IMG/VR virus record: IMGVR_UViG_3300036781_000418
Location: 1-64,000 of that record
DNA: 64,000 nt
Direction: 5' to 3' (one strand)
Shown: piece after piece, positions 8,215 to 58,049 of the stretch
How positions within the stretch are numbered: the first letter of the stretch is position 1
Layout of the letters: each line of letters begins with the position of its first letter
Position numbers and translations under genes: made by a program
The notes under the pieces: model-generated
Databases searched by the model: none
The model's input: only the letters and a program-made list of their open reading frames with translations
What the model was told of the DNA's origin: nothing

Positions 8215-8760
8215 ATGCTGCTAACCGAAGACAAACCAACCTCGATCTCCTTTGATCTTTCAATTGACGGTACCAAGTCAGTTCCATCTTCAGTGCGCCT
8301 CGTCATGGGTTCAAACCCTGGCATCGTCTATGAGGCCAGTAAGGAAGACGGCAAGTGGTCCTGCAGCTTTACCCCACCTAAGTCGCTTGGTTCATCCTTT
8401 CCAATTTTGATCGAAGTCGTCGTGAACGGCTCCGTGTTCGTTCCGTACAAGTCCACCGCCTCGTTTAAGCCACTTGAAACCGTTTCAGTTTCCAACGTTA
8501 CCGAAGCCAACAAGTTTGCCGACCTACGTGACCGCACCTTTACCGCTGAGCAGCAGACACGTGTGAAGGCTCGCACCACCGAGCTGCTCAAGACCCTTGA
8601 ACCCAAGCCAGTTCAACCCAAAAAATCTACGCCCAAGTCAACCCAAGTCAAACTACAATTGCCTGAAAGCAAGGTGAAGCTTGGAGCCGGTCTAAATGAG
8701 TCGACCTCCAGCACCACCGTAGGAATCAAGTTTACCAAGGGACCAGTCGTCTACAAATGA
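8215..8760 (+). CDS. hypothetical protein
   Basis: Follows TAAATA at 8184-8189; packed operon. Confidence 0.65.
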   Translation: MLLTEDKPTSISFDLSIDGTKSVPSSVRLVMGSNPGIVYEASKEDGKWSCSFTPPKSLGSSFPILIEVVVNGSVFVPYKSTASFKPLETVSVSNVTEANKFADLRDRTFTAEQQTRVKARTTELLKTLEPKPVQPKKSTPKSTQVKLQLPESKVKLGAGLNESTSSTTVGIKFTKGPVVYK

Positions 8761-11443: not shown

Positions 11444-11857
11444 ATGAGGGTCGTTCACCTCTTTGAGGAGAACCTCGACCGTGAAGACGCACTGCATGCA
11501 ATGCAGCTCATGGCTAAATTCCTCACTAAGAAGCTTGGTGAGGAATACAAGGTATTTGACCGCGACCAAGGTAGTGGCAAGCCTCTTCCAGTCATGCTCA
11601 TTGAGGTAAAACCTGCGGTAAATTACATGGCCGCCAGTACGGATAGCAGCGCTGGTCGCTCCGCCCACATTTCACGTGGGGCTGATAAATGGGAAGTTGT
11701 CATCTATGAGGGGCGTAGGCGATCACAGACTTTGCTACACAAATTTAAGGTCGACACGGACAAAGAGGCGGTAGACACAGCCGTTGAATACGTGAAGAAG
11801 TTCGATGTTAATAAGCCGTACGTTGGCTCATTTAGAGCTGAAGATGCCGATGAGTGA
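11444..11857 (+). CDS. putative internal head protein, paralog family A
   Basis: MRVVHLFEE leader; weak similarity to downstream paralogs (..AVEYVKKF). Confidence 0.6.
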   Translation: MRVVHLFEENLDREDALHAMQLMAKFLTKKLGEEYKVFDRDQGSGKPLPVMLIEVKPAVNYMAASTDSSAGRSAHISRGADKWEVVIYEGRRRSQTLLHKFKVDTDKEAVDTAVEYVKKFDVNKPYVGSFRAEDADE

Positions 11858-11875
11858 TCTTAGGTATAACAAACT

Positions 11876-12247
11876 ATGAAACTTAATCACCTCTTTGAAG
11901 ATGATCTTGACGATCAGTTGGACGGGGCCGAAGAAGACTTCGCCATCTTGGCGCGCTCAGCCACTAAGACGCTGGGCCACAAGTTCAACTTCATCAAGGG
12001 CTATGGCTCAGTCACGCTTGAGATGAACGCCGACGACCTGTCGTTCTTTGAAGCTGACGGCATTGAAATCCCGTACCTTATCTTTACACCTTTCACGCCT
12101 AAGGGTGAACACGATGATCAATATCAGTACAAGGTGTCCTTGTACAACGGTGTTCAGATGGACGGTACCTTGTACGCGAAGCTTGGTGCCGCGTACACCG
12201 CGTTCATTGAACTTGCCAAGACCCAAATCGCAAAGAAGAAGCCATGA
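11876..12247 (+). CDS. putative internal head protein, paralog family A
   Basis: MKLNHLFED leader; LDGAEEDF..IEIPYL domain. Confidence 0.65.
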   Translation: MKLNHLFEDDLDDQLDGAEEDFAILARSATKTLGHKFNFIKGYGSVTLEMNADDLSFFEADGIEIPYLIFTPFTPKGEHDDQYQYKVSLYNGVQMDGTLYAKLGAAYTAFIELAKTQIAKKKP

Positions 12248-12669
12248 AGCTCAACAGCATTCTTGAACATTTTGACGATGAAGATGACGGGGACGACGGT
12301 GCTGGCGACGCCGCCATCCTTAAGGCGGAGTTTGAAGAAGCCGTTGACGACCTCGAACTGCTGGCTAAGATTGAATCCAAGCGATTTGACCTAGATCTGT
12401 TCGTGCGTGTGAACAATGGAGTGGGTGTAGCTACGATTGAATGCGAAAGCGCCCTTGATCAAGGCCTCAGAGCCAAGTACGACATCGAGTTGCCGAAGTT
12501 GGAGTTTAGTCAAACCAACCGTATCCTGAAGAATGAACCGTACACCATCACCATGTGGCACAAGGCACCTCGGCGACTTTCAACGTCACGCTACCGTGAC
12601 CTCAAGACCGCGCACGCTGAGTACGTCAAGCTCATAAAATATCAGCTGGAGAAGAGGACTGAGCCATGA
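12244..12669 (+). CDS. putative internal head protein, paralog family A
   Basis: MKLNSILE leader; DDLELLAK..KRF..IELP domain. Confidence 0.65.
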   Translation: MKLNSILEHFDDEDDGDDGAGDAAILKAEFEEAVDDLELLAKIESKRFDLDLFVRVNNGVGVATIECESALDQGLRAKYDIELPKLEFSQTNRILKNEPYTITMWHKAPRRLSTSRYRDLKTAHAEYVKLIKYQLEKRTEP

Positions 12670-13658
12670 AGCTTGACCACCTTCTCGAAGACTCCAACAA
12701 GGAAACTTTGGACGGGGTTAAAGAAGACTTTGAACTCTTCGCGCTCGCGGACACCAAGCGCTTTGGGCTTGGGTTTGACGTGCGCGAAACGGCCACCTCC
12801 GTGATACTGGGTCTGACCTACGAGATCTCAGATAAGATTGAGGCGGACAACAGAAACAGAGTTGAACTGCCGTATCTAATGTTCAGCAATGACAGTGAAT
12901 TCCCGGAACCGTTTAGAGTGGCTTCGTGGAACCATCAGAGTAAGATTGTCCCGCCACGATACTTCAAGAGCGCCAGTCAAGCACATGCCGCAATGGTCTT
13001 TATCATGCGTCAACAGTTGAAGGTGGCGGGGATTATTAAAGAAGAGTCGTCAGGTGAGCTCACGTCCGCCGGTACGTGGAAGCACGCGCTGCGCGTGTTG
13101 GGCCAACACGATGAGCTCAACGTCATTGACTGCGTGACAAGTGCAACCGTCACAATTGCGCTTGCTGCGTTCTTCAATGAACACATGCGTGCGGACATTA
13201 AGGACGCTCATTCTGGCAACTATGAGGAGCTCTTTGACAAGGTCAATAAGGACCGCAAGCTGCTTGACTTGTTCGTCGAACACATGGGCAACAAGCTGGT
13301 CAAGCTGCAGCCGCTGATCTCCGTCAAAGTTCGTAAGGCGTTTGACATGTGCATTGCGAAGTACGTTGATTTGGCGGACGTGAAGGAGGACCTTGAACTG
13401 CTTGGCGCCGCCCTTGCAAAGATCTACGACACTGACTACAAAATCGTAGTTAAAGATGGACACGTGGATCTCCGTGTTGACGTTGAGACGGATAAAGACG
13501 GTGTCGAACCTTACATCACCTACAGCCTGAACACGTTCCGACTTGAGTTCATTACGGACCTTAGACGAACTCAAGTGCTGCCGCGCTACTTCCTCACCGC
13601 GGGTCAGCTGTCAAAGGTGGCCGTCGAATATGCCAAGCGCTTTAAAGACGCTAAATAA
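12666..13658 (+). CDS. putative internal head protein, paralog family A (two domain copies)
   Basis: MKLDHLLED leader; VKEDFEL..PRYF and VKEDLEL..PRYF repeats. Confidence 0.65.
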   Translation: MKLDHLLEDSNKETLDGVKEDFELFALADTKRFGLGFDVRETATSVILGLTYEISDKIEADNRNRVELPYLMFSNDSEFPEPFRVASWNHQSKIVPPRYFKSASQAHAAMVFIMRQQLKVAGIIKEESSGELTSAGTWKHALRVLGQHDELNVIDCVTSATVTIALAAFFNEHMRADIKDAHSGNYEELFDKVNKDRKLLDLFVEHMGNKLVKLQPLISVKVRKAFDMCIAKYVDLADVKEDLELLGAALAKIYDTDYKIVVKDGHVDLRVDVETDKDGVEPYITYSLNTFRLEFITDLRRTQVLPRYFLTAGQLSKVAVEYAKRFKDAK

Positions 13659-35306: not shown

Positions 35307-35793
35307 TCGCCCTAGCCTTCATCTCAGGCACCTTGTCGTCGAGGAACTTAGCGACCTCGACGGCGTCGATGATCCGAACCTTAGTTGGCTTGGAGACGCC
35401 GTTAGCGTAGAAGATGTTCCAACCACCCTGCCTAAACTCCATCTCAACGCTGACCCTTACGGCCTCCGCTTTTGGTACGTCCCAGAACGCGAAGATGTGG
35501 TGTGACGCATAGCTGGTCTTAAGGGCCTGGCCATTGTCCACGGTCAAGCCAAGCTTTTCCAGCTTCTTCATGAACAGGTGCTGGTCAACGTCCAGGTCTT
35601 CTGGCTCATGGGCGCCGGTAACTCGGCTTACGACGCCGTCAATCTGTGCGGCTGATAGAATGTCCGACAAGATATCGGCCAACTTGTCCTGTACTTGCTT
35701 AGGATCGTCCACCTGGGCGAAGGCGTCGTGTAGGGCCTTAAGCTTGTTAGTTTTGCTGTCGACTGAGGCCTCGAAAAGGTGCTGGATATGCAT
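35263..35793 (-). CDS. putative internal head protein
   Basis: MHIQHLFEA leader; TAAATA at 35817-35822 on minus. Confidence 0.65.
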   Translation of the reverse strand: MHIQHLFEASVDSKTNKLKALHDAFAQVDDPKQVQDKLADILSDILSAAQIDGVVSRVTGAHEPEDLDVDQHLFMKKLEKLGLTVDNGQALKTSYASHHIFAFWDVPKAEAVRVSVEMEFRQGGWNIFYANGVSKPTKVRIIDAVEVAKFLDDKVPEMKARATKAALRQAAPKGSV

Positions 35794-35816
35794 GGATCGG
35801 CGTCCGGTAGTTTCTC

Positions 35817-35841
35817 TATTTATGGCCGGCCTCGCTAAATA
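35817..35841. promoter_or_regulatory. divergent late promoters
   Basis: TATTTA at 35817-35822 and TAAATA at 35836-35841. Confidence 0.65.
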
Positions 35842-35930
35842 AGCCATGACCGCAAGGTCTAGCAAAGGGTTCGGCTCCATCTTCTTGGCGCTGGTAAATC
35901 GTTCACGATGTCCCGCTAAAGGAGAGAAAC

Positions 35931-36356
35931 ATGGCTACAATTGAAAAGCGCGCTACGTCCCTGAACCACGTGTTCCTGATCGACTGGCATGACGACGGCA
36001 TCCTACGCGAAATCATCGTCGTGATGGAGGATAAGGTCGGTGCAATCTACGGCATCGAAGTTAACCGCCTTCACCCAATCGACAAGGGTCGCCTCAAGAA
36101 GGTGATCACGTCCATCCACTCGGACAAGTACTCGCTGTGGCAGCTGCTCGCCGACTCACGTCTGCCTAACGGCATGAACGCCCTTGACTTCTTCCACGCT
36201 AACTACGTGAAGGTCAAGCGTCCTCGTGGCTCGATCGGTGCAATGTCCATGGGTGGCACGATGGCTGATATTCAGATCACCAACGAGTCCGACAAGGTTA
36301 TCGGCTCAGGCTTCACCTCAGGTGTGGCTACGGCGGCTGAACCTACGTCGATGTAA
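35931..36356 (+). CDS. hypothetical protein
   Basis: AGGAG RBS; strong codon bias. Confidence 0.8.
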   Translation: MATIEKRATSLNHVFLIDWHDDGILREIIVVMEDKVGAIYGIEVNRLHPIDKGRLKKVITSIHSDKYSLWQLLADSRLPNGMNALDFFHANYVKVKRPRGSIGAMSMGGTMADIQITNESDKVIGSGFTSGVATAAEPTSM

Positions 36357-36376
36357 CCTGCGACCTGGTAGTACGG

Positions 36377-36400
36377 AGAGGTTCTTCGGAACCTCTTTTT
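36377..36400 (+). terminator. terminator
   Basis: AGAGGTTC-TTCG-GAACCTCT plus T run. Confidence 0.85.
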
Positions 36401-36443
36401 GGCCTCTGCTGTGTTACTATTTTTGAACTGAGAGGAGCACAGC

Positions 36444-36746
36444 ATGGATGAAGAAGTTTACAAGGTCTCCATTGTCGGTGACCTGCCTGAGATCGTCAAG
36501 GGAGTTACCGTCGAGATTGACGACGAACTGCCACGACACACGACCACGTTTGCGTGCCTCTGTGGCGGCGACAACGTGATTGAAGCACCGAGCACGCCCG
36601 ACGAAATCAATGGTCAGCTCAACTGCAACCGCGACTACGCGTGCTGCTGCGTTGCCTTCACCTGTCCTAAGTGCGGGCTTCGTTATGCCGGCAGTCAGGC
36701 CGCTCCAGAGTACATCCCAGACTATGAGCTGGACTCTGAAGATTAA
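36444..36746 (+). CDS. Cys-rich putative zinc-ribbon protein
   Basis: CxC, C..CC, CPKC; AGGAG RBS. Confidence 0.65.
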   Translation: MDEEVYKVSIVGDLPEIVKGVTVEIDDELPRHTTTFACLCGGDNVIEAPSTPDEINGQLNCNRDYACCCVAFTCPKCGLRYAGSQAAPEYIPDYELDSED

Positions 36747-36816
36747 ACCAGTTGGCCGATGGTCAACGTCAGAGGTGCTCACGCACCCTTCATGATCAAC
36801 CACAAAAGGAGTCATC

Positions 36817-37449
36817 ATGCGGCGCATCCTACTTGCGTTGACGGTCGTTCTGTCCTCGTCAGCTTTCCTAATCAACTACGCCTTCTCGGAGATGCCTCAG
36901 GCCAAGGGCACGGTCGTCATCGGCGAGAAGCCCACCTACATCAAAGGCAACCAAGCGGTCACCCTCCTGCCGACCGACCTCAACATGAGCCAGGCCCAGC
37001 TCCTCAGCAAGGCCTATGAGATCGCGAAGGCCGACGGCCACAAGGATCCAGAGCTCGTGCAGGGCATTATCCTTCAGGAGTCTGAGGCGGGTCGGGCCAC
37101 GGCCTACCGCGTTGCAGGCTCGAAGTCGGAGCCGTACTACGGCGTCGGTCAAGTGAAGCTGGACGCGACGCGTGACGTCATGTCGGCCTACCCAGCCATG
37201 TGGACGAAGTACCGCTTCCAAACGAAGACGGACGATGAGCTCAAGGCCTACTTGATCTTGAACAACGTCTTCAACATGGAGGTGACGTCCAAGTACCTCC
37301 GCATCTTGGAAGTTCGCTACGGCCTCTCTGGTCGCGACCTGCTGAACGCCTACCAGAAGGGGCCAGGTGGCTACAAGGAAGTTGACCCTGATGAGTACCA
37401 CTACGCCCGTGGGGTTGAGGACAAGCTGGCAAGGATGAAGCGTCGATGA
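36817..37449 (+). CDS. lytic transglycosylase (SLT-like) with N-terminal signal/anchor
   Basis: QES catalytic motif, GVGQV, AYQKG, Y..V; hydrophobic N-terminus. Confidence 0.8.
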   Translation: MRRILLALTVVLSSSAFLINYAFSEMPQAKGTVVIGEKPTYIKGNQAVTLLPTDLNMSQAQLLSKAYEIAKADGHKDPELVQGIILQESEAGRATAYRVAGSKSEPYYGVGQVKLDATRDVMSAYPAMWTKYRFQTKTDDELKAYLILNNVFNMEVTSKYLRILEVRYGLSGRDLLNAYQKGPGGYKEVDPDEYHYARGVEDKLARMKRR

Positions 37450-37988
37450 TGAAGAATATCGTGCTACCGCAGATCAAACGCGTCGTGCCATCCACCGTGG
37501 TGATGACGAACGTTGGTGTGCAACCAATGTCGGCACCAAGTGGGATACTACCAATGCTTAGGTACAATTTCACTCCCAACGTTGTCACTGTTGACATTGC
37601 GCGACCAACTATCATGTTGATCACGCATGACCAGTATATGGAGTTAAGATGTAAGAATAGCGTCGTTGACACTTGCGTAGCTCGCTCATGGCCAGTTGAC
37701 GCAATTATGGCATGGCTCCAGTCAAACATCGATCCAGAAGGCTCAATCATCATCCATGTCAATCAGCTTAGCTTGATTGTCTCATCTGGTATTTGGTCTG
37801 GTATACTAAAAGGGCGGGCTTACTTGTATAGCCTAGGGCAAGATAAAGGATTGTCCTTTCACTTTAACGGCATGATCGCTTTGGTTGGGTTAGATGAACT
37901 TACGCCTGTTAAACAGCGGGCCGCATTCTCGCGACTTCGGTTGATCGCGCCCAAGACGCAAATCATCCCCGGCAAGTACAAGCTCTAA
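37446..37988 (+). CDS. hypothetical protein with N-terminal major-capsid (Gol-like) segment
   Basis: IKRVVP..VGVQPMSAPSG..LR matches the T4 gp23 RRAIP..GVQPMNSPTG..LR segment; remainder unrelated and more AT-rich. Confidence 0.65.
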   Translation: MMKNIVLPQIKRVVPSTVVMTNVGVQPMSAPSGILPMLRYNFTPNVVTVDIARPTIMLITHDQYMELRCKNSVVDTCVARSWPVDAIMAWLQSNIDPEGSIIIHVNQLSLIVSSGIWSGILKGRAYLYSLGQDKGLSFHFNGMIALVGLDELTPVKQRAAFSRLRLIAPKTQIIPGKYKL

Positions 37989-37998
37989 GCACCGCTAC

Positions 37999-38038
37999 GG
38001 CGACACGAGAGGCCACCGGCTCATACGGTGGCCTCTCT
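37999..38038 (+). repeat. GGCGACACGAG-family repeat fused to a terminator hairpin
   Basis: GGCGACACGAGAGG, then GAGAGGCCACCG..CGGTGGCCTCTC. Confidence 0.75.
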
Positions 38039-38076
38039 TCATTTAGCTCTACAACCTAAGCGGCCCACAGCAACTG

Positions 38077-38106
38077 GGACGCACGTCGTGGCTCGATCGT
38101 TACAAT
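38077..38106 (+). promoter_or_regulatory. putative middle promoter GGACGC-N18-TACAAT
   Basis: Recurrent motif upstream of the primase-helicase operon. Confidence 0.65.
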
Positions 38107-38140
38107 CTACCTATCAACTTTAACTTTGGTAGGTGCATTG

Positions 38141-38440
38141 ATGAGCTATGAACCGACTGGCTACCAGCCAGGCCGCCCACGATACGGCGAGGTTCGTCCT
38201 GACAGTGATCGTAAGTACGCGGCTCGCGAGCGAGCACGTGAACGTCGCGCCACTGACCCTGAGTACGCCGAGCGCTGTCGCGCCGCGTACCGTCGCTGGT
38301 ACTACAACAATCCAGCTCGGGCCATGGCCATGCAGAAGGCCTGCAAGCTGCGCATGAAGGGCTTCAAGGAGCTGCTTGAGCACCAGAATTACGTGGTCAC
38401 CGACCCTGCTCAGCTGATCATCACCGCGGGCTTTGAGTGA
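38141..38440 (+). CDS. basic hypothetical protein
   Basis: AGGTG RBS; Arg-rich helix. Confidence 0.6.
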   Translation: MSYEPTGYQPGRPRYGEVRPDSDRKYAARERARERRATDPEYAERCRAAYRRWYYNNPARAMAMQKACKLRMKGFKELLEHQNYVVTDPAQLIITAGFE

Positions 38441-39474
38441 TCAAGCAAGTACTTCTCTGGGACCTCATCACCACTCGGATCGGGCTTGGCGCTCGAAAGC
38501 CGAACGGCTGGTACCCATGCCGCTGTCTCATCTGCAACGACTACCAAGAACGCGGTGGTTTTAAGCAGGACGGTGATGAGGTCCGTTGGAAGTGCTTCAA
38601 CTGTGGCTCACGCTTCAAGTACACCGAACATTCTGGCAAGCTCTACTCCGACGCGAAGCAAGTTCTCTACTCCTTTGGAGTCACCAGCAACGAGCTGGAC
38701 GAGGTCCTTGGCTCCACGTTCTTCAACAAGGGCGAGGCCAAGGCGGAGATCAGCGAGGAAACGCTCAAGCCAAAGTTCTCACTGTTCACGCCTGAGATTG
38801 AGCTCCCACCAAGCTCCCACCTGCTAGGCGCGCCCATCAAGGACGAGCTGCAAAACCCGCTGATCGAGTACATGGTGCAGCGCAAGCTTGACCCAATCAA
38901 GCTCAACGCCCACTTCAGCTTGGATCCGAAGTTTCTCGGTCGCATCATCGTGCCATGCTACCGTGACACGAAGGTGATCTTCTGGCAGGCCCGCACGATC
39001 TTCAAGGACGTCAACCCACGGTACCTCTCACCGTCGGTCGTCAAGGAGGCCGTGCTCTGGGGCTACGACAACATCTGGCGTCGGTACGACACACCGCTCT
39101 TCATCACTGAGGGCATCTTCGACGCCCACCACCTAGACGGTGTCGCCCTGCTCGGCTCCGAGTTGACGGCCGCGAAGTTGGAGGTGTTGAACCGCACGAA
39201 GCGTCGGAAGGTGGTCGTGGTCGACCGCAACATGAACGGCAAGAAGCTGGCTGAGGTCGCGCTCACCAACGGTTGGGAGATCACCTTCCCACCTGAAGGC
39301 ACGAGTGACACCAACGACAGCGTGCAGAAGCACGGCCTCGCGTACACTATGTGGACCTTGATGCGGGACATTACGCAACCCACAGGGGTGAAGGACGTCG
39401 ACGGCCTGACGGTACAATCGAAGCTTCAACTCAACATGCAACTCGCACTGGCTAACATTGGCAGATCAAAGTGA
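38437..39474 (+). CDS. DNA primase (gp61-like)
   Basis: Zn finger C..C..CFNC; WQAR; TOPRIM ITEGIFDA and DxN. Confidence 0.92.
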   Translation: MIKQVLLWDLITTRIGLGARKPNGWYPCRCLICNDYQERGGFKQDGDEVRWKCFNCGSRFKYTEHSGKLYSDAKQVLYSFGVTSNELDEVLGSTFFNKGEAKAEISEETLKPKFSLFTPEIELPPSSHLLGAPIKDELQNPLIEYMVQRKLDPIKLNAHFSLDPKFLGRIIVPCYRDTKVIFWQARTIFKDVNPRYLSPSVVKEAVLWGYDNIWRRYDTPLFITEGIFDAHHLDGVALLGSELTAAKLEVLNRTKRRKVVVVDRNMNGKKLAEVALTNGWEITFPPEGTSDTNDSVQKHGLAYTMWTLMRDITQPTGVKDVDGLTVQSKLQLNMQLALANIGRSK

Positions 39475-39650
39475 AGACCTACTACTCAGCCACCATCACG
39501 ATCGAGCTGCCCACCAGCCTGCAAAGCTACGAGGAGGCACACCAGCTGGCCGTCCTCTGTAAGGAGGCGCTTGATCACGCCATCAACGGAGGTGGGGAGT
39601 TTGCCCTCAGCCTCGGTGAAATCACGGAGCACCATGACAACTCTAATTGA
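39471..39650 (+). CDS. 59-aa hypothetical protein (not in ORF track)
   Basis: GTGA overlap; fills the primase-helicase gap with typical codons. Confidence 0.55.
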   Translation: MKTYYSATITIELPTSLQSYEEAHQLAVLCKEALDHAINGGGEFALSLGEITEHHDNSN

Positions 39651-40962
39651 CGACGAGGCCCAGCGCCTCTTTATGACCACCATGCTGGGCAACCCCTCGT
39701 TGTTTGCCCGCGTCCAACACCTGATCAAGCCGTCGTACTTCGACTTGCAGTTCCAGCATGGTGTGAAGTTCATGCAGGACTTCTTCCAAGATCACCGTGG
39801 AGTTCCCTCCCAGCCGGTCTTTCAAGCGGCCACGAAGTTGCCGCTGCAACCAGCCCAGTTGCCGACGCAGGACGTCGCCTTCGTGGCCGAGCAGATCGCG
39901 AACTTCTGCCAGATCCGAGCGTCCATCGAGGCCGTGATGACGGCCCCGGCCCTGATCGAGAAGGGCGACTTCGGTTCGTTGGTGGCCAACATCAAGTCGG
40001 CGTCGGAGATCAAGCTTCACACGGACCTCGGCATCGACTACTTCGCCGACCCAGCCGCTCGCCTGACTGAGGACGAAGCGGAGGACATTCCCTTTCCACT
40101 TGGCTGGGACACGGTGGACGACCTCATCGGTGGCGGCATGGGTCGTGAGGAGCTGCTCCTGTTTCTCGCCAACTCAGGTGGTGGTAAGTCCGTCACGATG
40201 TTGAACGTTGCCTACAACCTCATCAAGCGTGGGTTGAACGGCGTCTACATCTCGTTGGAAATGAAGGACAAGAAGGTCGCCAAGCGGTTGGACAGCATCA
40301 TCTCGCGCATCGTCGGCAAGAAGATCTTCCTCAACAAGATGGAGGTCGTCCACCAGATCGAGCAGCTGCGGGAGCAGGGCGCCGGTCGGTTCTTCGTAAA
40401 GCGGATGCGGGAGAACACGACCACCTCCAACCACATCATCGCCTACCTCCGTGAGCTCGAGGCGGTCTACGCCTTCAAGCCTGACTTCGTAGTAGTGGAC
40501 TACCTTGACCTGCTGGGTTCCGTTCGCAAGATGACGAGCGACTCCCTGTTCACCAAGGACAAGTACGTCGCCGAGGAAGTTCGAGCCATCGGCTTCGACT
40601 TCAAGTGCCTGATGATCTCAGCTTCACAGCTTGGACGTGGTGCCATCACCGCGGTTCGTGAGGACAAGGACCTTGGCCAAGACCACATTCAAGGTGGTAT
40701 CTCGAAGATCAACACGGCCGACCTCGTGATCGGCTTGGTGAAGGACGAGGCGATGGACGCGGCGGGCGAGTACCGCTTCGAGTTCTTGAAGTCACGGAAC
40801 TCCAGCGCGGTCAACAAGAAGTTGATGATGAAGTGGGACTCGCTCTCACTGCGAATCAGCGACTGGCCGAAGCAGGACGGCTACAGTCGACCGATCAGCG
40901 CCACCACTCCAACTGGACCAAAGTTGATTCCAGGCCGAAAGCAGAACTTGTCGGACCTCTAA
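39634..40962 (+). CDS. replicative DNA helicase (gp41/DnaB-like)
   Basis: ANSGGGKS, ISLEM, VDYLD, SASQ, KSR. Confidence 0.95.
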   Translation: MTTLIDDEAQRLFMTTMLGNPSLFARVQHLIKPSYFDLQFQHGVKFMQDFFQDHRGVPSQPVFQAATKLPLQPAQLPTQDVAFVAEQIANFCQIRASIEAVMTAPALIEKGDFGSLVANIKSASEIKLHTDLGIDYFADPAARLTEDEAEDIPFPLGWDTVDDLIGGGMGREELLLFLANSGGGKSVTMLNVAYNLIKRGLNGVYISLEMKDKKVAKRLDSIISRIVGKKIFLNKMEVVHQIEQLREQGAGRFFVKRMRENTTTSNHIIAYLRELEAVYAFKPDFVVVDYLDLLGSVRKMTSDSLFTKDKYVAEEVRAIGFDFKCLMISASQLGRGAITAVREDKDLGQDHIQGGISKINTADLVIGLVKDEAMDAAGEYRFEFLKSRNSSAVNKKLMMKWDSLSLRISDWPKQDGYSRPISATTPTGPKLIPGRKQNLSDL

Positions 40963-41008: not shown

Positions 41009-41719
41009 TCAAGAGTTCGGGAACGGACCCGTTGCTGGGGTGAACGTGCCAGTGTAGCGAGCCACACCCTTGGTGACACGCACTTCGTCGATGTAGCCAG
41101 GGAAGAAGTGGGCGTCGGTAGAGCCACCAACCCGTGCTACTTGTGACGTCATGTTGATCGAGTTCGTCGCCGTACCAGCCGACACACCGTTGATCCACAC
41201 CGTCAGAGTCGTGCCAGAACGTGTCACGGCGACGTGTGACCAGGTGTTCACCACCACGGCCACAGTTGACGTCAGGTAGTTGGCCAAGTGGTTACCCAAG
41301 ACCACACGACCAGAACCGTTCACGTAGGCGTTGCAACCGTCTTGAGCTGAGGCGCTGGCCGAGCAGATGAACGTACCGACCGTCACGAAGGACGTTGGGA
41401 AGATCCAGCATTCCTGCGTGAAGTCACCAGTGCCGAAGGCGTAGGCCGCGATAGTCGGAAAGTCAAGATAGTCTGTTGAGCCGTTGAACTTGCCCGACGT
41501 TGCACCGTACTTGAACTGAGTCGTTGACGTGACTGGAGTACCCGTCCGAGTCGGCGTGGCTCCCTTCTGGTCGGTGAACACGGTGCCGTTGTTGGCACCT
41601 TCCATGTGCATGAGCAGCGAGACGTTGGCGAAGAACGGATCAACGGAGAGCGCGACTCCACGCTGGGCCCCGAAGGACCGAGCCGAAGCCGCGCCGAAAG
41701 TTGACATAAGAGGCATCAT
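41009..41719 (-). CDS. LamG/concanavalin A-like receptor-binding protein
   Basis: DPFF.NVSLL.H.EG, FGTGDFT.ECW, W.HVAV.R, GYIDEVR.TKGVARY. Confidence 0.85.
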   Translation of the reverse strand: MMPLMSTFGAASARSFGAQRGVALSVDPFFANVSLLMHMEGANNGTVFTDQKGATPTRTGTPVTSTTQFKYGATSGKFNGSTDYLDFPTIAAYAFGTGDFTQECWIFPTSFVTVGTFICSASASAQDGCNAYVNGSGRVVLGNHLANYLTSTVAVVVNTWSHVAVTRSGTTLTVWINGVSAGTATNSINMTSQVARVGGSTDAHFFPGYIDEVRVTKGVARYTGTFTPATGPFPNS

Positions 41720-41725
41720 GGATCC

Positions 41726-43783
41726 TTACTTGTACTGGGTTTGCGATGCGAGCACCGTGTAGGTGGCCGACGCGGTCTTGATAATCGTGAACGAATACGA
41801 GTCGATACCGCTTGCGTTACCAGCACTTGGCGCGACACCACCAATCCACTTTGGCGTCACGGCGGAACCGTCCACTTGGTAGGCTGAAGCGTAGAACGGC
41901 GAAGCACCGTTGGTGATCAACATAGCGACCGAGACTGACTCACCGACTGCGAGGGCCGTGTTCATCGACGTACCGCTGGACCATGCAAAGTTGACCGTGA
42001 AGTTGGCCGTTGCGTTGGACGTGTAGTACTGGACGGCACCTGACGCGGCGTAGAATGTCTGTGTCGTGGACGGTGCCGATCCAACGACCGACACGACTTC
42101 CGTAGCGTTGGTCAAGTGGGCGGCCGGAGCGGAGGTTGTACCAGCCAGCGTGGTGGAACCAAGGGTAGCCGTGCTGGTTGTCGTCAGCGTGCTGAAGCGA
42201 CCAGTCGAAGCCGTGGTAGCGCCGATTGGCGTGTTGTCGATCGACGTAGCGGATACGGCACCGGTGAGGGTGATGGTCGTGCCAGTCAAGGCGATCGTCG
42301 TACCAGCCAGCGTGATGGTCGTCGCTGTGTTACCAGTGCGAGCCACCGTGAGCCAGTCGGCGTTCGAGGAGATCGCGTCGTTCTGGAGCGTGAAGTGGAT
42401 CGTACCACCAGAGCCAACGTAGATTTCCGAGGTCTTCAGGTCAGTGCCAACGGCACTGTTGATGAGACGGACGATTGGGAAGGAGTTGGTGTCAATACCC
42501 GCGTAGGTACCCGTAGTTCCAGCGCTTGAGACCAAGCTCGTGCCGTTCAGCGACGTGACGGACAGGCTCTGCCAAGTAGCTGAGGTGCCGTCCGTGATCA
42601 GGGCCTTGGTGGCGTTGGTGGCTTGCGATGGGAGGATCGCGGTCAGGGCGGCGGCCGCGGAAGTCGCGCCAGTACCACCGTTGGCGAGGGCCAACGTGCC
42701 AGCCAGCGTGATCGTGCCGGAGGTCGTGATTGGAGAACCCGTAACCGTCAGACCAGTCGTACCACCGGAGAAGGCGACCGAAGTCACGCCACCACCAGCG
42801 GAGGAGACCTGCGAGAACGTCAGGCTGGTCGTGCCGACGGTGATCGCGCCAGAGGTGATGAGCACCCAGCCAGTTCCACCGTTCAAGGTACCAGATTGGA
42901 CGTACACGAAGTCACCGGATGAGACTTCGTTCGATGGGTTGCCGTCGAAGTCGGCGGCTCGTGCCCAAGCGCCAGCAGCCGAAACGTAAACGCCGTTCTG
43001 CGAGCCAGTCGATTGGTTCTTGACCAGCACGCGTGAGCCGCTGGTGAGAACACCGTCGATGGTTTGTTCACCTGACAGGGTCAGGTTGGCGGTCGATGCA
43101 ACGTTGACGGACGGCTTTGGGGTGAGACCAGCGGCGACCGCGTCAACGTACTGCTTGGTGGCGACTTGAAGGTTGCCAGTTGGGTCAGCGGAGACCGAGA
43201 CAGTACCAGCCAACGCAATGGCCGTGCCAGTCAGGGTAATAGTGGTAGCCGTCGTGCCGGTACGAGCGACCGAGAGCCAGTCGACGTTGGACGAGATGGC
43301 GTCGTCTTGCAGAGTCCAGTGAATCGTGCCGTTGTTACCGACGTAGACTTCAGACGTCTTAGCGTTTGAGCCGGCTGACGAGTTCAGGAACCGCGTGATT
43401 GGGAAACTGTTTGAGTCCAAACCAACGTAAACACCAGTCGTGCCTGAGCTGGAGACCAGCGCGGTGGCCGAGAGGCTAGTTGGGGTGCCAGCCACTGTGG
43501 ACCAGACACCGTCACCACGCCAATAGGTAGAGCTGGACGCGTTGGTGCCGCTGTTCAGGTGGGACACGTCCAAGTTGCCGGTGGCCGTTGAAAGGTCGAC
43601 TGAGCCACTACCACCAGACTGTGACCAGGTGGATCCGTTGTAGGAGTAGAGACCTTCAGGCGCTGCGTCGGTGCGGTAGAACAGTTCGCCGACGGATGGA
43701 TTCGATGGGAAAGCCGTACCGTTCGCCACGGTAAGGTTGGTTACGACAGACCCTTCGAGGAGGGTTAGACCGTCTGAATGCAT
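41726..43783 (-). CDS. tail fibre protein
   Basis: ATKQYVD, RVLVKNQ..NGVY domain; ~90-aa internal duplication; TAAATA at 43811-43816 on minus. Confidence 0.85.
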   Translation of the reverse strand: MHSDGLTLLEGSVVTNLTVANGTAFPSNPSVGELFYRTDAAPEGLYSYNGSTWSQSGGSGSVDLSTATGNLDVSHLNSGTNASSSTYWRGDGVWSTVAGTPTSLSATALVSSSGTTGVYVGLDSNSFPITRFLNSSAGSNAKTSEVYVGNNGTIHWTLQDDAISSNVDWLSVARTGTTATTITLTGTAIALAGTVSVSADPTGNLQVATKQYVDAVAAGLTPKPSVNVASTANLTLSGEQTIDGVLTSGSRVLVKNQSTGSQNGVYVSAAGAWARAADFDGNPSNEVSSGDFVYVQSGTLNGGTGWVLITSGAITVGTTSLTFSQVSSAGGGVTSVAFSGGTTGLTVTGSPITTSGTITLAGTLALANGGTGATSAAAALTAILPSQATNATKALITDGTSATWQSLSVTSLNGTSLVSSAGTTGTYAGIDTNSFPIVRLINSAVGTDLKTSEIYVGSGGTIHFTLQNDAISSNADWLTVARTGNTATTITLAGTTIALTGTTITLTGAVSATSIDNTPIGATTASTGRFSTLTTTSTATLGSTTLAGTTSAPAAHLTNATEVVSVVGSAPSTTQTFYAASGAVQYYTSNATANFTVNFAWSSGTSMNTALAVGESVSVAMLITNGASPFYASAYQVDGSAVTPKWIGGVAPSAGNASGIDSYSFTIIKTASATYTVLASQTQYK

Positions 43784-57794: not shown

Positions 57795-58049
57795 TCAGAG
57801 GATCCGCTTGGCAGCAGTGGTCAGGGTTCGAACAGCATTATTGAACGCAACTGGCTCGACCATAGTTTGACCCAGGTTGAATTCAGTCACAACGCTCACT
57901 TCAACATTCGAAAACATGAAGATACCCTTACGACCATCTTTTTCGATGGAGTCGAGACGGTATCCCTTAACCTTTAGAACCGCGGCGAAGACGATGTCAT
58001 TCGTCTCCACATTTTGCAGGCTGCTCATGATCTTGCTCTGGGTATTCAT
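57795..58049 (-). CDS. small protein (DUF5659-like)
   Basis: T.DI.FAA.L...GY.L..I...G...F.F pattern; TAAATA at 58058-58063. Confidence 0.6.
   Translation of the reverse strand: MNTQSKIMSSLQNVETNDIVFAAVLKVKGYRLDSIEKDGRKGIFMFSNVEVSVVTEFNLGQTMVEPVAFNNAVRTLTTAAKRIL

What the first reader, a model, noticed from the sequence alone, without database searches (positions are those of the whole stretch)
37446..37988. Orphan ORF beginning with a mimic of the major-capsid Gol peptide
Seen: residues 5-39, IVLPQIKRVVPSTVVMTNVGVQPMSAPSGILPMLR, align without gaps to the T4 gp23 segment as I recall it, AVMGMVRRAIPNLIAFDICGVQPMNSPTGQVFALR (10 of the first 29 identical, including GVQPM..P.G). The other ~140 aa do not resemble capsid protein, the ORF is AT-richer, and it lies among non-capsid genes. 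Known: this gp23 segment is the Gol peptide, which binds EF-Tu and activates the Lit abortive-infection protease. Capsid proteins are also triggers for other defences. Inference: a decoy or inhibitor of capsid-sensing immunity, an EF-Tu-binding module, or a handle that docks the C-terminal domain on capsid-assembly factors.
Basis: partly seen in the sequence, partly recalled or inferred. Interest (0 to 1): 0.76.

Follow-up and report, generated by a model that had tools for sequence, protein, structure and literature searches.

The report
Accessory phage gene with capsid-derived start
A small, fast-evolving gene of a 343-kb soil jumbo phage begins with a roughly 45-residue stretch inherited from the most conserved part of the phage's own major capsid protein and continues into an unrelated domain; this is real and unusual, but nothing yet shows that it works as an immune decoy.

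Summary
ORF 37446-37988 (180 aa) is a real open frame, and residues 2-48 are homologous to the N-arm/first shell strand of gp23-type capsid proteins, the T4 'Gol' stretch. The match is strongest to this phage's own capsid protein (20/46 identical; hhalign E 5e-9; alignment score about 15 SD above shuffles). DNA identity is only 48%, so it is an old copy by descent, not a recent duplication. The other 130 residues match no capsid or other family.

The ORF is not a complete orphan. The closest relative has a 32%-identical homologue in the same slot, although flanking genes are 72-89% identical. The best-kept block is QPM..SG..P.RYNF, inside the capsid-derived part. The slot between the SLT-like gene and the primase is hypervariable: empty in RsoM2USA, a homing endonuclease in one relative.

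Similar capsid fragments occur in other small non-capsid ORFs of this genome, Xoo-sp13 and XacN1. In XacN1 ORF261 the fragment looks dispensable.

Best reading: a translated accessory gene that took over a capsid-gene fragment, probably as a docking strand. The decoy, EF-Tu and Lit ideas remain untested. Interest is moderate.

The parts
37446..37988 (+). ORF A: 180-aa coding sequence including the stop codon. An accessory gene with a capsid-derived N-terminus.
   Evidence: An open 180-codon frame at this composition has P about 1.5e-4 in shuffles. Both halves score alike in this frame for codon usage (-0.14 and -0.16), the best of the three forward frames. A homologue in L009 keeps the frame across 12 gap runs.
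37446..37449 (+). ATGA overlap: the ORF's start codon overlaps the stop of the upstream SLT-like gene, an arrangement that suggests translational coupling.
   Evidence: The same arrangement is seen in L009 (upstream gene ends 1875, ORF starts 1872).
37449..37589 (+). Capsid-derived module, residues 2-48. It equals own capsid protein residues 59-105 and T4 gp23 about 91-134, that is N-arm plus first ordered shell strand, and it includes the Gol-equivalent stretch.
   Evidence: Structural meaning from PMC9546572; Gol definition from PMC3014915.
37518..37571 (+). Residues 25-42, VQPMSAPSGILPMLRYNF: the best-conserved block between the two family members (11/18 identical).
37590..37661 (+). Residues 49-72: a weak, colinear continuation of the capsid similarity into the start of the clade's insertion-domain region (VD..TI..IT...E...NS).
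   Evidence: Gapped BLASTP 27/71 identical, E 2e-10. This stretch is weak on its own.
37662..37985 (+). C-terminal domain, residues 73-180: no detectable family. A low-confidence model suggests an alpha/beta fold.
   Evidence: AlphaFold pLDDT 33 and 45.5. Foldseek found nothing.
37707..37709 (+). Alternative start M88, used by the source's gene caller (93-aa product P0001).
   Evidence: No Shine-Dalgarno upstream, and no codon-usage reason to prefer it.
38007..38047 (+). Intrinsic-terminator-like hairpin (12-bp stem, 9 G-C pairs) plus T-rich tail, 19 nt after the stop codon.
   Evidence: sequence.
36817..37449 (+). Upstream SLT-like gene (210 aa, signal-peptide-like N-terminus): the conserved left border of the variable slot.
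   Evidence: 72% identical to its L009 counterpart.
38141..38440 (+). Small basic ORF just upstream of the primase. It shares the slot with ORF A and is conserved in L009 and L014.
38437..39474 (+). DNA primase: the conserved right border of the variable slot.
   Evidence: phrog_47 E 2.7e-33.

Best explanation
ORF A is a translated, lineage-restricted, fast-evolving accessory gene that sits in a hypervariable cargo slot of a Rak2/XacN1-type jumbo phage. It arose when a piece of the lineage's own gp23-type capsid gene became the 5' end of a new gene encoding an unrelated ~110-130-aa alpha/beta domain. That piece runs from just after the propeptide, through the N-arm, to the first shell strand.

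The capsid-like stretch is therefore similar by descent. I think it is kept because it still works as an extended docking strand. In the real capsid protein this segment is the flexible N-terminal piece that faces the scaffolding core in the prohead and later pairs with neighbouring subunits. In T4 it is also what EF-Tu binds. Carried on another protein, it would compete for, or dock onto, a partner of unassembled capsid protein and bring the C-terminal domain with it.

Shown here: the homology, old age, ORF integrity, family conservation centred on the strand, the variability of the slot, and the recurrence of such fragments. Inferred: that the strand still binds anything, and which partner it binds. 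My ranking of partners within this explanation is capsid protein or scaffold (assembly interface) about 0.2, EF-Tu or a capsid-sensing immune protein about 0.15, other about 0.05.
For: Homology to the own capsid protein.

Old copy under constraint: DNA identity is 48% and third codon positions match at 15/44, yet 43% of amino acids and 12 of 25 clade-invariant capsid residues are kept.

The ORF is coding: the open frame has P about 1.5e-4, and a 32%-identical homologue keeps the frame over its whole length despite 12 gap runs.

The most conserved block of the family lies inside the capsid-derived part: 11/18 identical against 43/138 elsewhere.

Gene architecture: start coupled to the upstream stop in both phages, and a strong terminator downstream.

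Fast divergence inside a conserved frame: 32% identity against 72-89% for flanking genes. The slot content differs in every relative sampled.

The same capsid segment heads other unrelated small ORFs: ORF B (hhalign E 3.5e-5) and Xoo-sp13 gp312 (Pfam E 0.0011).

Structural role of the segment in T4: disordered and inward-facing in the prohead, probably contacting the scaffold, the site of head-length mutations A94V and G97S, and the N-arm after expansion (PMC9546572). EF-Tu binding by this segment: PMC3014915.
Against: There is no direct evidence of binding or of expression.

The homologue's capsid-like half has decayed: hhalign E 0.08 and an inserted KSTLG. Precise mimicry of the capsid protein is therefore not being maintained.

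Only 12 of 25 clade-invariant capsid residues survive in ORF A.

In XacN1 ORF261 the capsid segment is C-terminal and is the variable part. One variant has a 6-residue deletion in it, and another lacks it.

XacN1 ORF451 carries a different capsid piece. This suggests a non-specific scattering of capsid-gene fragments rather than selection for this particular segment.

The window copy is AT-shifted and scores poorly for this phage's codon usage. The protein language model hardly recognises it. The source's gene caller skipped the capsid-like part.
Confidence: 0.4

Rival explanations
1. One reading: an anti-defence decoy or inhibitor. The Gol-like N-terminus engages EF-Tu and/or a capsid-sensing immune protein (Lit-type protease, Avs7/8, Dsr1, CapRel, Thoeris). 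The fused domain blocks activation, protecting the later burst of real capsid protein. This is the special case of the best explanation in which the partner is immune or EF-Tu.
For: The segment is the Gol equivalent. Many defences sense capsid protein, and some use EF-Tu. The gene diverges fast and lies in a variable slot among replication genes, as many anti-defence genes do. Its position in the replication cluster would fit expression before the capsid gene (inference only).
Against: The Gol peptide alone activates Lit (PMC3014915), so a faithful mimic made early would trigger abortive infection rather than block it. The Gol-specific first two thirds are not conserved between the two family members (7/24 identical). 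Only 10/29 residues match T4 Gol. There is no PADLOC or anti-defence family hit. The host and its defences are unknown. No capsid-fragment decoy was found in the literature searched.
Confidence: 0.15
2. Relic only. The capsid fragment supplied raw coding material, and its surviving strand is now just a structural element of a new fold. The protein has some unrelated accessory function, and the resemblance to Gol has no functional meaning.
For: The capsid likeness has decayed in the homologue. Half of the invariant capsid residues are lost. Fragments of other capsid regions also occur in small ORFs (XacN1 ORF451). The ORF261 tail looks dispensable. The N-arm/Gol segment and the spine helix are the most conserved parts of the family profile, so old fragments of them remain detectable longest, which is a detection bias.
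Against: The capsid-derived block is the best-conserved part of the family. Three unrelated ORFs carry the segment at their extreme N-terminus, starting within about three residues of the same capsid position (58-60). Random relics would not be expected to line up like this.
Confidence: 0.3
3. Decaying debris. A recombination leftover that is no longer functional. The open frame is transient, and only the 93-aa C-terminal call, or nothing at all, is expressed.
For: Lowest GC and GC3 in the window, and negative codon-usage scores. The source's gene caller skipped the 5' half. There are no homologues at standard thresholds among 1.8 billion representatives. Atlas recognition is low. The slot is a hot spot for insertions, including an HNH endonuclease in L013.
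Against: A 180-codon open frame at 48% GC is unlikely by chance (P about 1.5e-4). A 32%-identical homologue retains a full-length frame with conserved blocks throughout. The gene has a tidy architecture, with a coupled start and a strong terminator. M88 has no ribosome-binding site and no codon-usage advantage.
Confidence: 0.12
4. Head-targeting tag. Like the capsid-targeting sequence of T4 internal proteins, the N-terminal module takes otherwise unrelated, polymorphic small proteins into the prohead by binding the scaffolding core. They would then be injected with the DNA.
For: Unrelated ORFs (A, B, Xoo-sp13 gp312) share only this N-terminal module. In T4 the homologous capsid segment lies inside the prohead next to the scaffold. 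A scaffold-like coiled-coil gene precedes the capsid gene in this genome (function inferred from position and composition). From general knowledge, T4 internal-protein loci are hypervariable and share only an N-terminal tag.
Against: There is no sequence similarity to the T4 tag, and no L-x-E protease motif directly after the module (sequence). In XacN1 ORF261 the module is C-terminal. The genes lie in replication clusters, not head clusters. The virion status of XacN1 ORF261 and ORF451 could not be read, because the list is in a figure not held.
Confidence: 0.1

Closest known systems
Gol region of T4 gp23 (the Lit / EF-Tu abortive-infection trigger)
   Same: It is the homologous stretch of a gp23-type capsid protein. 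ORF residues 5-39 align without gaps to T4 A94-R128, and GVQPM..P.G and LR are kept.
   Different: 10/29 identical to T4. It is closer to this phage's own capsid protein. It sits in a non-capsid protein. The Gol-specific first two thirds are not conserved within the ORF family. EF-Tu binding and Lit activation are untested.
gp23-type major capsid protein (Pfam PF07068, HK97 fold): N-arm plus first E-loop/I-linker strand
   Same: Residues 2-48 (weakly to 72) are homologous to residues 59-105 (124) of the resident capsid protein.
   Different: Only profile positions 5-44 of 376 are matched, and the score is below the gathering threshold. There is no P-domain or A-domain, and the remaining 130 aa are unrelated.
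phrog_12830: short 'major head protein' ORFs that end in this same segment
   Same: ORF B, Xoo-sp13 gp312 and XacN1 ORF261 match its last ~30 positions. This shows that isolated copies of this capsid segment recur in phage genomes.
   Different: In that family the segment is at the C-terminal end of a 128-position model, whereas in ORF A it is N-terminal and followed by a 130-aa domain. ORF A itself was not listed as matching phrog_12830.
Capsid-targeting sequence of T4 internal proteins in hypervariable loci
   Same: The logic is the same: unrelated, fast-changing small proteins that share only a short terminal module related to head assembly.
   Different: No sequence similarity and no protease site, and packaging is not shown. 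This is a recalled analogy only.
Phage accessory genes ('morons' or ORFans) in hyperplastic slots bordered by conserved genes
   Same: A variable slot between the conserved SLT-like and primase genes, atypical composition, its own terminator, and a homing endonuclease in the same slot of a relative.
   Different: This one is visibly built from a fragment of an essential structural gene.

Membership tests
Gol peptide (T4 gp23 / Lit system) | Sequence corresponds to the 29-residue gp23 stretch that defines Gol function. | tested here: met
   Gap-free alignment of ORF residues 5-39 to T4 A94-R128. The homology is significant through the own-clade capsid profile. Identity to T4 itself is only 10/29.
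Gol peptide (T4 gp23 / Lit system) | The 13 critical residues of the 20-residue Gol core are retained. | not tested
   The review (PMC3014915) cites the scanning mutagenesis but does not list the residues. The primary paper was not in the library.
Gol peptide (T4 gp23 / Lit system) | Binds domains II and III of EF-Tu. | not testable with these tools
   Needs a pull-down or a co-fold. The weak Foldseek row for EF-Tu (E 0.39, TM 0.23) is noise from a low-confidence model.
Gol peptide (T4 gp23 / Lit system) | Promotes Lit cleavage of EF-Tu between G59 and I60. | not testable with these tools
   Needs a biochemical or genetic assay. The host and its defences are unknown.
gp23-type major capsid protein (PF07068) | Reaches the family's curated score and covers the HK97-fold core (P and A domains). 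| tested here: not met
   18.6 bits against a cut-off of 24.4, covering only profile positions 5-44 of 376. Residues 49-180 score -5.0 bits against the clade capsid HMM.
T4-type internal protein with capsid-targeting sequence | N-terminal ~10-residue tag ending in an L/I-x-E prohead-protease site. | tested here: not met
   No such motif follows the module in ORF A, its L009 homologue or ORF B (sequences). The only L-x-E in ORF A is L149-D150-E151, near the C-terminus.
T4-type internal protein with capsid-targeting sequence | Protein is packaged in the head. | not testable with these tools
   No virion proteome exists for this phage. The XacN1 virion list is in a figure not held.
Exon fragment of an intron- or homing-endonuclease-split capsid gene | A group I intron RNA or an endonuclease domain adjoining the fragment. 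| tested here: not met
   No Rfam match at E <= 1 in 35500-39500, and no intron-family match around ORF B or the capsid gene (only a weak whalefall-1 sRNA hit, E 0.25, 19.4 bits against a cut-off of 37). No endonuclease domain in ORF A. The resident capsid gene is intact.
Known anti-phage-defence or counter-defence families | Profile match to a described family. | tested here: not met
   No PADLOC, Pfam or PHROG family other than the capsid hit.

The most novel reading that the evidence does not exclude
Jumbo phages of the Rak2/XacN1 group repeatedly turn the N-arm/Gol segment of their own capsid protein into a portable module on small accessory proteins. ORF A would be a counter-defence protein of this kind. 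It would be made before the capsid protein and would occupy EF-Tu or a capsid-sensing immune receptor with a non-activating look-alike. That would make it the first phage-encoded capsid-fragment decoy.
Probability: 0.12. Interest if true: 0.85.

Novelty: new variant of a known kind. Interest (0 to 1): 0.45.

Why it matters
Capsid proteins are now known to trigger many bacterial defences: Lit, CapRel, Avs7/8, Dsr1, Thoeris and CBASS. In at least two of these, EF-Tu takes part. A phage protein that carries the most conserved, EF-Tu-binding, scaffold-facing stretch of the capsid protein on an unrelated domain is an obvious candidate for interfering with capsid sensing or with head assembly. I found no such protein described. 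Even if it proves to be only a relic, the set collected here shows that fragments of an essential structural gene are reused as building material for new accessory genes in jumbo phages, and it gives cultured systems in which to test this. The set is ORF A, its L009 homologue, ORF B, Xoo-sp13 gp312, and XacN1 ORF261 and ORF451; the cultured phages are Xoo-sp13 and XacN1.

Tried and rejected
1. My idea that the ORF's C-terminus (SRLRLIAPKTQIIPGKYKL) is the capsid E-loop return strand, making the ORF a truncated capsid paralogue. Rejected: hhalign finds only the N-terminal match, and residues 49-180 score -5.0 bits against the capsid HMM, below the shuffle median.

2. Spondin_N similarity of residues 89-140 (P0002, summed E 7.8e-8). 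The score adds up six near-identical repeats, and each stretch alone reaches only about 30 bits or less. Pfam does not report Spond_N for the ORF. Set aside.

3. Recent duplication of the resident capsid gene. Rejected: 48% DNA identity, with third codon positions matching at 15/44.

4. Intron or homing-endonuclease origin. No intron RNA and no endonuclease domain. Only circumstantial support: an HNH gene in the same slot of L013.

5. XacN1 ORF261's tail as a remnant of the second capsid paralogue that Xoo-sp13 keeps. No synteny between the two regions.

6. Structure. AlphaFold gave pLDDT 33 (single sequence) and 45.5 (two sequences). Foldseek against PDB found nothing significant, and the Atlas found nothing.

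7. More family members. Pattern scans of viral and metagenome contigs with ORF A, its homologue and their alignment found none. L040 is the same phage as L009, so no dN/dS test was possible.

8. Expression. No RNA run was listed.

9. The fourth 'VQPMSGP' hit, at G000 97430-97543, is a chance match (E 0.11, 8 residues).
Full report
WHAT IS THERE

The window is the first 64 kb of a 342,591-bp virus record with direct terminal repeats, from a soil metagenome. Its major capsid protein (G000 131661-132947, 428 aa) is a full gp23-type protein (Pfam Gp23, E 2e-86). The closest GenBank relative is Ralstonia phage RsoM2USA (capsid protein 52.5% identical), followed by Stenotrophomonas phages CM1 and RAS14 and Xanthomonas phages XacN1 and Xoo-sp13. 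This places the phage among the Rak2/XacN1-like jumbo myoviruses. Many closer relatives exist only as metagenome contigs (capsid protein 71-94% identical).

Its start codon overlaps the stop of the upstream SLT-like gene (ATGA). A strong terminator-like hairpin (12-bp stem, 9 G-C pairs, T-rich tail) lies 19 nt after its stop. Its GC (0.477) and GC3 (0.55) are the lowest in the window, against a window mean of 0.578 and typical GC3 of 0.7-0.8. An independent assembly of the source run spans 35500-40000 in one 41.5-kb contig with no differences, so neither junction of the ORF is an assembly artefact.

IS THE CAPSID RESEMBLANCE REAL?

Yes. ORF residues I5-R39 align without gaps to T4 A94-R128, with 10/29 and 12/35 identities. 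Against T4 alone this is marginal (E about 2 across PDB). Pfam Gp23 gives E 0.0014, below its gathering score.

The match to the phage's own capsid protein is much stronger. BLASTP gives 20/46 identical at E 6e-10, and 27/71 at E 2e-10 with gaps. The Smith-Waterman score is 102, against 32 +/- 4.7 and a maximum of 65 in 3000 shuffles. hhalign against a profile of 32 clade capsid proteins gives E 5.2e-9. In tblastn against all GenBank phages, 496 records matched, almost all of the 40 listed best hits lie in capsid genes, and the best are in own-group phages.

At the DNA level the two segments are only 48% identical, and third codon positions match at 15/44. So this is not a recent duplication of the resident gene. 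The alignment continues weakly but colinearly to residue 72, into the start of the clade's insertion-domain region. This argues for descent from this group's capsid gene rather than convergent mimicry.

The rest of the protein is not capsid-like. Residues 49-180 score -5.0 bits against the clade capsid HMM, below the median of shuffles. That also disposes of my own idea that the C-terminus is the E-loop return strand.

IS IT A GENE?

The source's gene caller called only M88-L180 (P0001). I see no reason to prefer that start. M88 has no Shine-Dalgarno sequence. Both halves have the same codon-usage score in this frame (-0.14 and -0.16), which is the best of the three forward frames but atypical for this phage (one reverse frame scores slightly higher over the N-terminal part). 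The 87 upstream codons would be open by chance with P about 0.008, and all 180 codons with P about 1.5e-4.

The decisive evidence is a homologue. In the closest relative with sequence here (L009, a 10.6-kb JGI contig with a primase 82% identical), the same slot holds a 195-aa ORF. It is also start-coupled to the SLT-like gene, and it is 32% identical to ORF A over 161 residues (BLASTP E 2e-15). The frame is preserved over the whole length despite 12 gap runs, which a dead gene would not manage.

Flanking genes are 72-89% identical between the two phages, so this gene evolves far faster than its surroundings, or has been replaced by a distant allele. The L009 copy has native composition (GC 0.56, GC3 0.75), and the window copy is AT-shifted. 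No other homologue was found in 5.8 billion clustered proteins, in 1.8 billion representatives, or in pattern scans of viral and metagenome contigs. A second contig, L040, is the same phage as L009, so no dN/dS test was possible. No RNA run was listed.

WHICH PART IS CONSERVED?

Between the two family members, identity is 7/24 in residues 1-24, 11/18 in residues 25-42 (VQPMSAPSGILPMLRYNF against TQPMVPSSG..GIYP-IRYNF), and 43/138 in the rest. The capsid-derived part thus contains the family's best-kept block. That block is the second half of the module, corresponding to T4 114-131, and overlaps only the end of Gol.

The homologue as a whole no longer matches the capsid profile significantly (hhalign E 0.08, although it aligns in register). 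ORF A keeps 12 of the 25 residues that are invariant in the clade's capsid proteins across this stretch.

CONTEXT

The slot between the SLT-like gene and the primase is hypervariable:
- RsoM2USA: the two genes are 68 bp apart.
- L010: ORFs of 71 and 98 aa.
- L013: two tiny ORFs and an HNH-type homing endonuclease on the opposite strand.
- L015: three ORFs.
- L016: five ORFs.
- L017: three ORFs.

None of these is related to ORF A.

OTHER CAPSID FRAGMENTS

The same genome has a second small ORF (ORF B, G000 230120-230386, 88 aa, native GC). Its residues 3-37 align to capsid residues 58-92 (Pfam E 1.5e-4; hhalign E 3.5e-5).

Scanning the GenBank relatives with the Gp23 model and following up gave:
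- Xoo-sp13 gp312: 72 aa, segment at the N-terminus, lying between the DNA polymerase and RNaseH genes.
- XacN1 ORF261: 261 aa, segment at the C-terminus, Pfam E 4e-8.
- XacN1 ORF451: 74 aa, carrying a different capsid piece (E-loop return strand plus spine helix), E 2e-7.
- Full second capsid paralogues in Xoo-sp13 and RAS14.

RsoM2USA, the Vibrio phage and EJP2 have no extra fragments. PHROGs holds a 128-position 'major head protein' family, phrog_12830, that ends in this very segment.

Six near-identical variants of ORF261 differ mainly in the capsid-like tail. One has a 6-residue deletion in it, and one lacks it altogether. There, the segment looks dispensable.

No intron RNA lies near ORF A, ORF B or the capsid gene.

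WHAT THE SEGMENT DOES IN A REAL CAPSID PROTEIN

In T4 gp23, the N-terminal region up to L106 is disordered and points into the unexpanded prohead, probably touching the gp22 scaffolding core. Head-length mutations A94V and G97S map there. After expansion it becomes the N-arm and N-fist, which make contacts between capsomers. The chain from residue 106 onwards is the first ordered part of the shell subunit (PMC9546572).

The same stretch is Gol. It comprises 29 residues, binds EF-Tu domains II and III, and lets the Lit protease cut EF-Tu between G59 and I60. It is also the most conserved region of gp23 (PMC3014915). Capsid proteins also trigger CapRel, Avs7 (with EF-Tu as a structural partner), Avs8, Dsr1, Thoeris and CBASS. 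I found no report of a phage-encoded capsid-fragment decoy.

INTERPRETATION

What is shown: ORF A is a real, probably translated, lineage-restricted and fast-evolving accessory gene in a variable slot, and its first ~45-70 residues descend from the lineage's capsid gene.

What is inferred: why the fragment is kept.

For a retained function:
- The fragment is old, yet 43% of its residues are conserved.
- The family's best-conserved block lies inside it.
- Three unrelated ORFs start with it, at nearly the same capsid position.

Against a retained function:
- The likeness has decayed in the homologue.
- Half of the invariant capsid residues are gone.
- A different capsid fragment also turns up in a small ORF.
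- The ORF261 tail is dispensable.
- There is a detection bias, because the most conserved capsid motifs stay recognisable longest.

I rate 'docking strand that still engages a partner of unassembled capsid protein' at about 0.4. Within that, assembly interface is about 0.2 and EF-Tu or immune sensor about 0.15. I rate 'relic inside a protein with an unrelated function' at about 0.3, and 'decaying debris' at about 0.12.

A faithful Gol mimic made early would be expected to trigger Lit rather than block it. The decoy idea therefore needs the fused domain to prevent activation, and nothing here tests that.

The C-terminal domain gave no usable model (pLDDT 33 and 45.5) and no fold or family match.

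VERDICT

This is a new variant of a known kind, namely an accessory gene built from a fragment of an essential gene. Interest is moderate (0.45). It would be high if the capsid-fragment decoy reading were shown.

Noticed in passing
L002:1492-1758 (G000 230120-230386, outside the window): ORF B, 88 aa with native GC, lies in a run of small same-strand ORFs downstream of a secreted DNA/RNA endonuclease-like gene. Its residues 3-37 align to capsid residues 58-92 (Pfam E 1.5e-4, hhalign E 3.5e-5). It is alone in its 90% cluster.
   Followed up: partly
L039:1405-1623 (Xoo-sp13 gp312); L037:2298-3083 (XacN1 ORF261); L038:1251-1475 (XacN1 ORF451): These are annotated non-capsid ORFs of cultured relatives that carry capsid fragments. 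In gp312 the N-arm segment is N-terminal. In ORF261 it is C-terminal and varies among six near-identical variants. ORF451 carries the E-loop return strand plus spine helix.
   Followed up: partly
L013:4139-4960 (- strand): An HNH-type homing endonuclease (…ERHHIIPGSMGGSNNKDNLVKLTAKEHYVCHW…) occupies the SLT-primase slot in one relative, marking the slot as an insertion hot spot.
   Followed up: no
L015:2920-3309 and L002:1710-1991: The ORF that is start-coupled to the SLT-like gene in L015 is 81% identical over 47 aa (E 6e-23) to the ORF directly downstream of ORF B in this genome. Small accessory genes evidently move between hot spots.
   Followed up: partly
L036:523-1716 (Xoo-sp13) and L032 (RAS14): Xoo-sp13 and RAS14 have a second full-length gp23-like paralogue (355-398 aa frames), possibly a vertex protein. 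This genome, RsoM2USA and XacN1 show none with the Pfam model.
   Followed up: no
window 38141-38440: A small arginine-rich ORF immediately upstream of the primase is conserved in L009 (43% identical) and L014 (31% identical, E 5e-8). It has a weak Pfam DUF4880 hit and a weak PADLOC PDC-M17B hit (E 0.015).
   Followed up: no
window 11444-13658, 8215-8760 and 57795-58049: Other ORFs with clearly lower GC (0.48-0.51) than the window mean of 0.578. These may be further foreign or fast-evolving insertions.
   Followed up: no
window 41009-43783 (- strand): Two large genes, one with a Laminin_G_3 domain, lie next to the helicase. Relatives have different Laminin_G_3/SPRY and Phage_phiTE_241_C proteins at the same place, so these are probably variable fibre or receptor-binding genes.
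   Followed up: no
phrog_12830: This 128-position PHROG family, annotated 'major head protein', ends in the N-arm/Gol segment. It suggests that capsid genes truncated or split just after this segment are common in phages.
   Followed up: no
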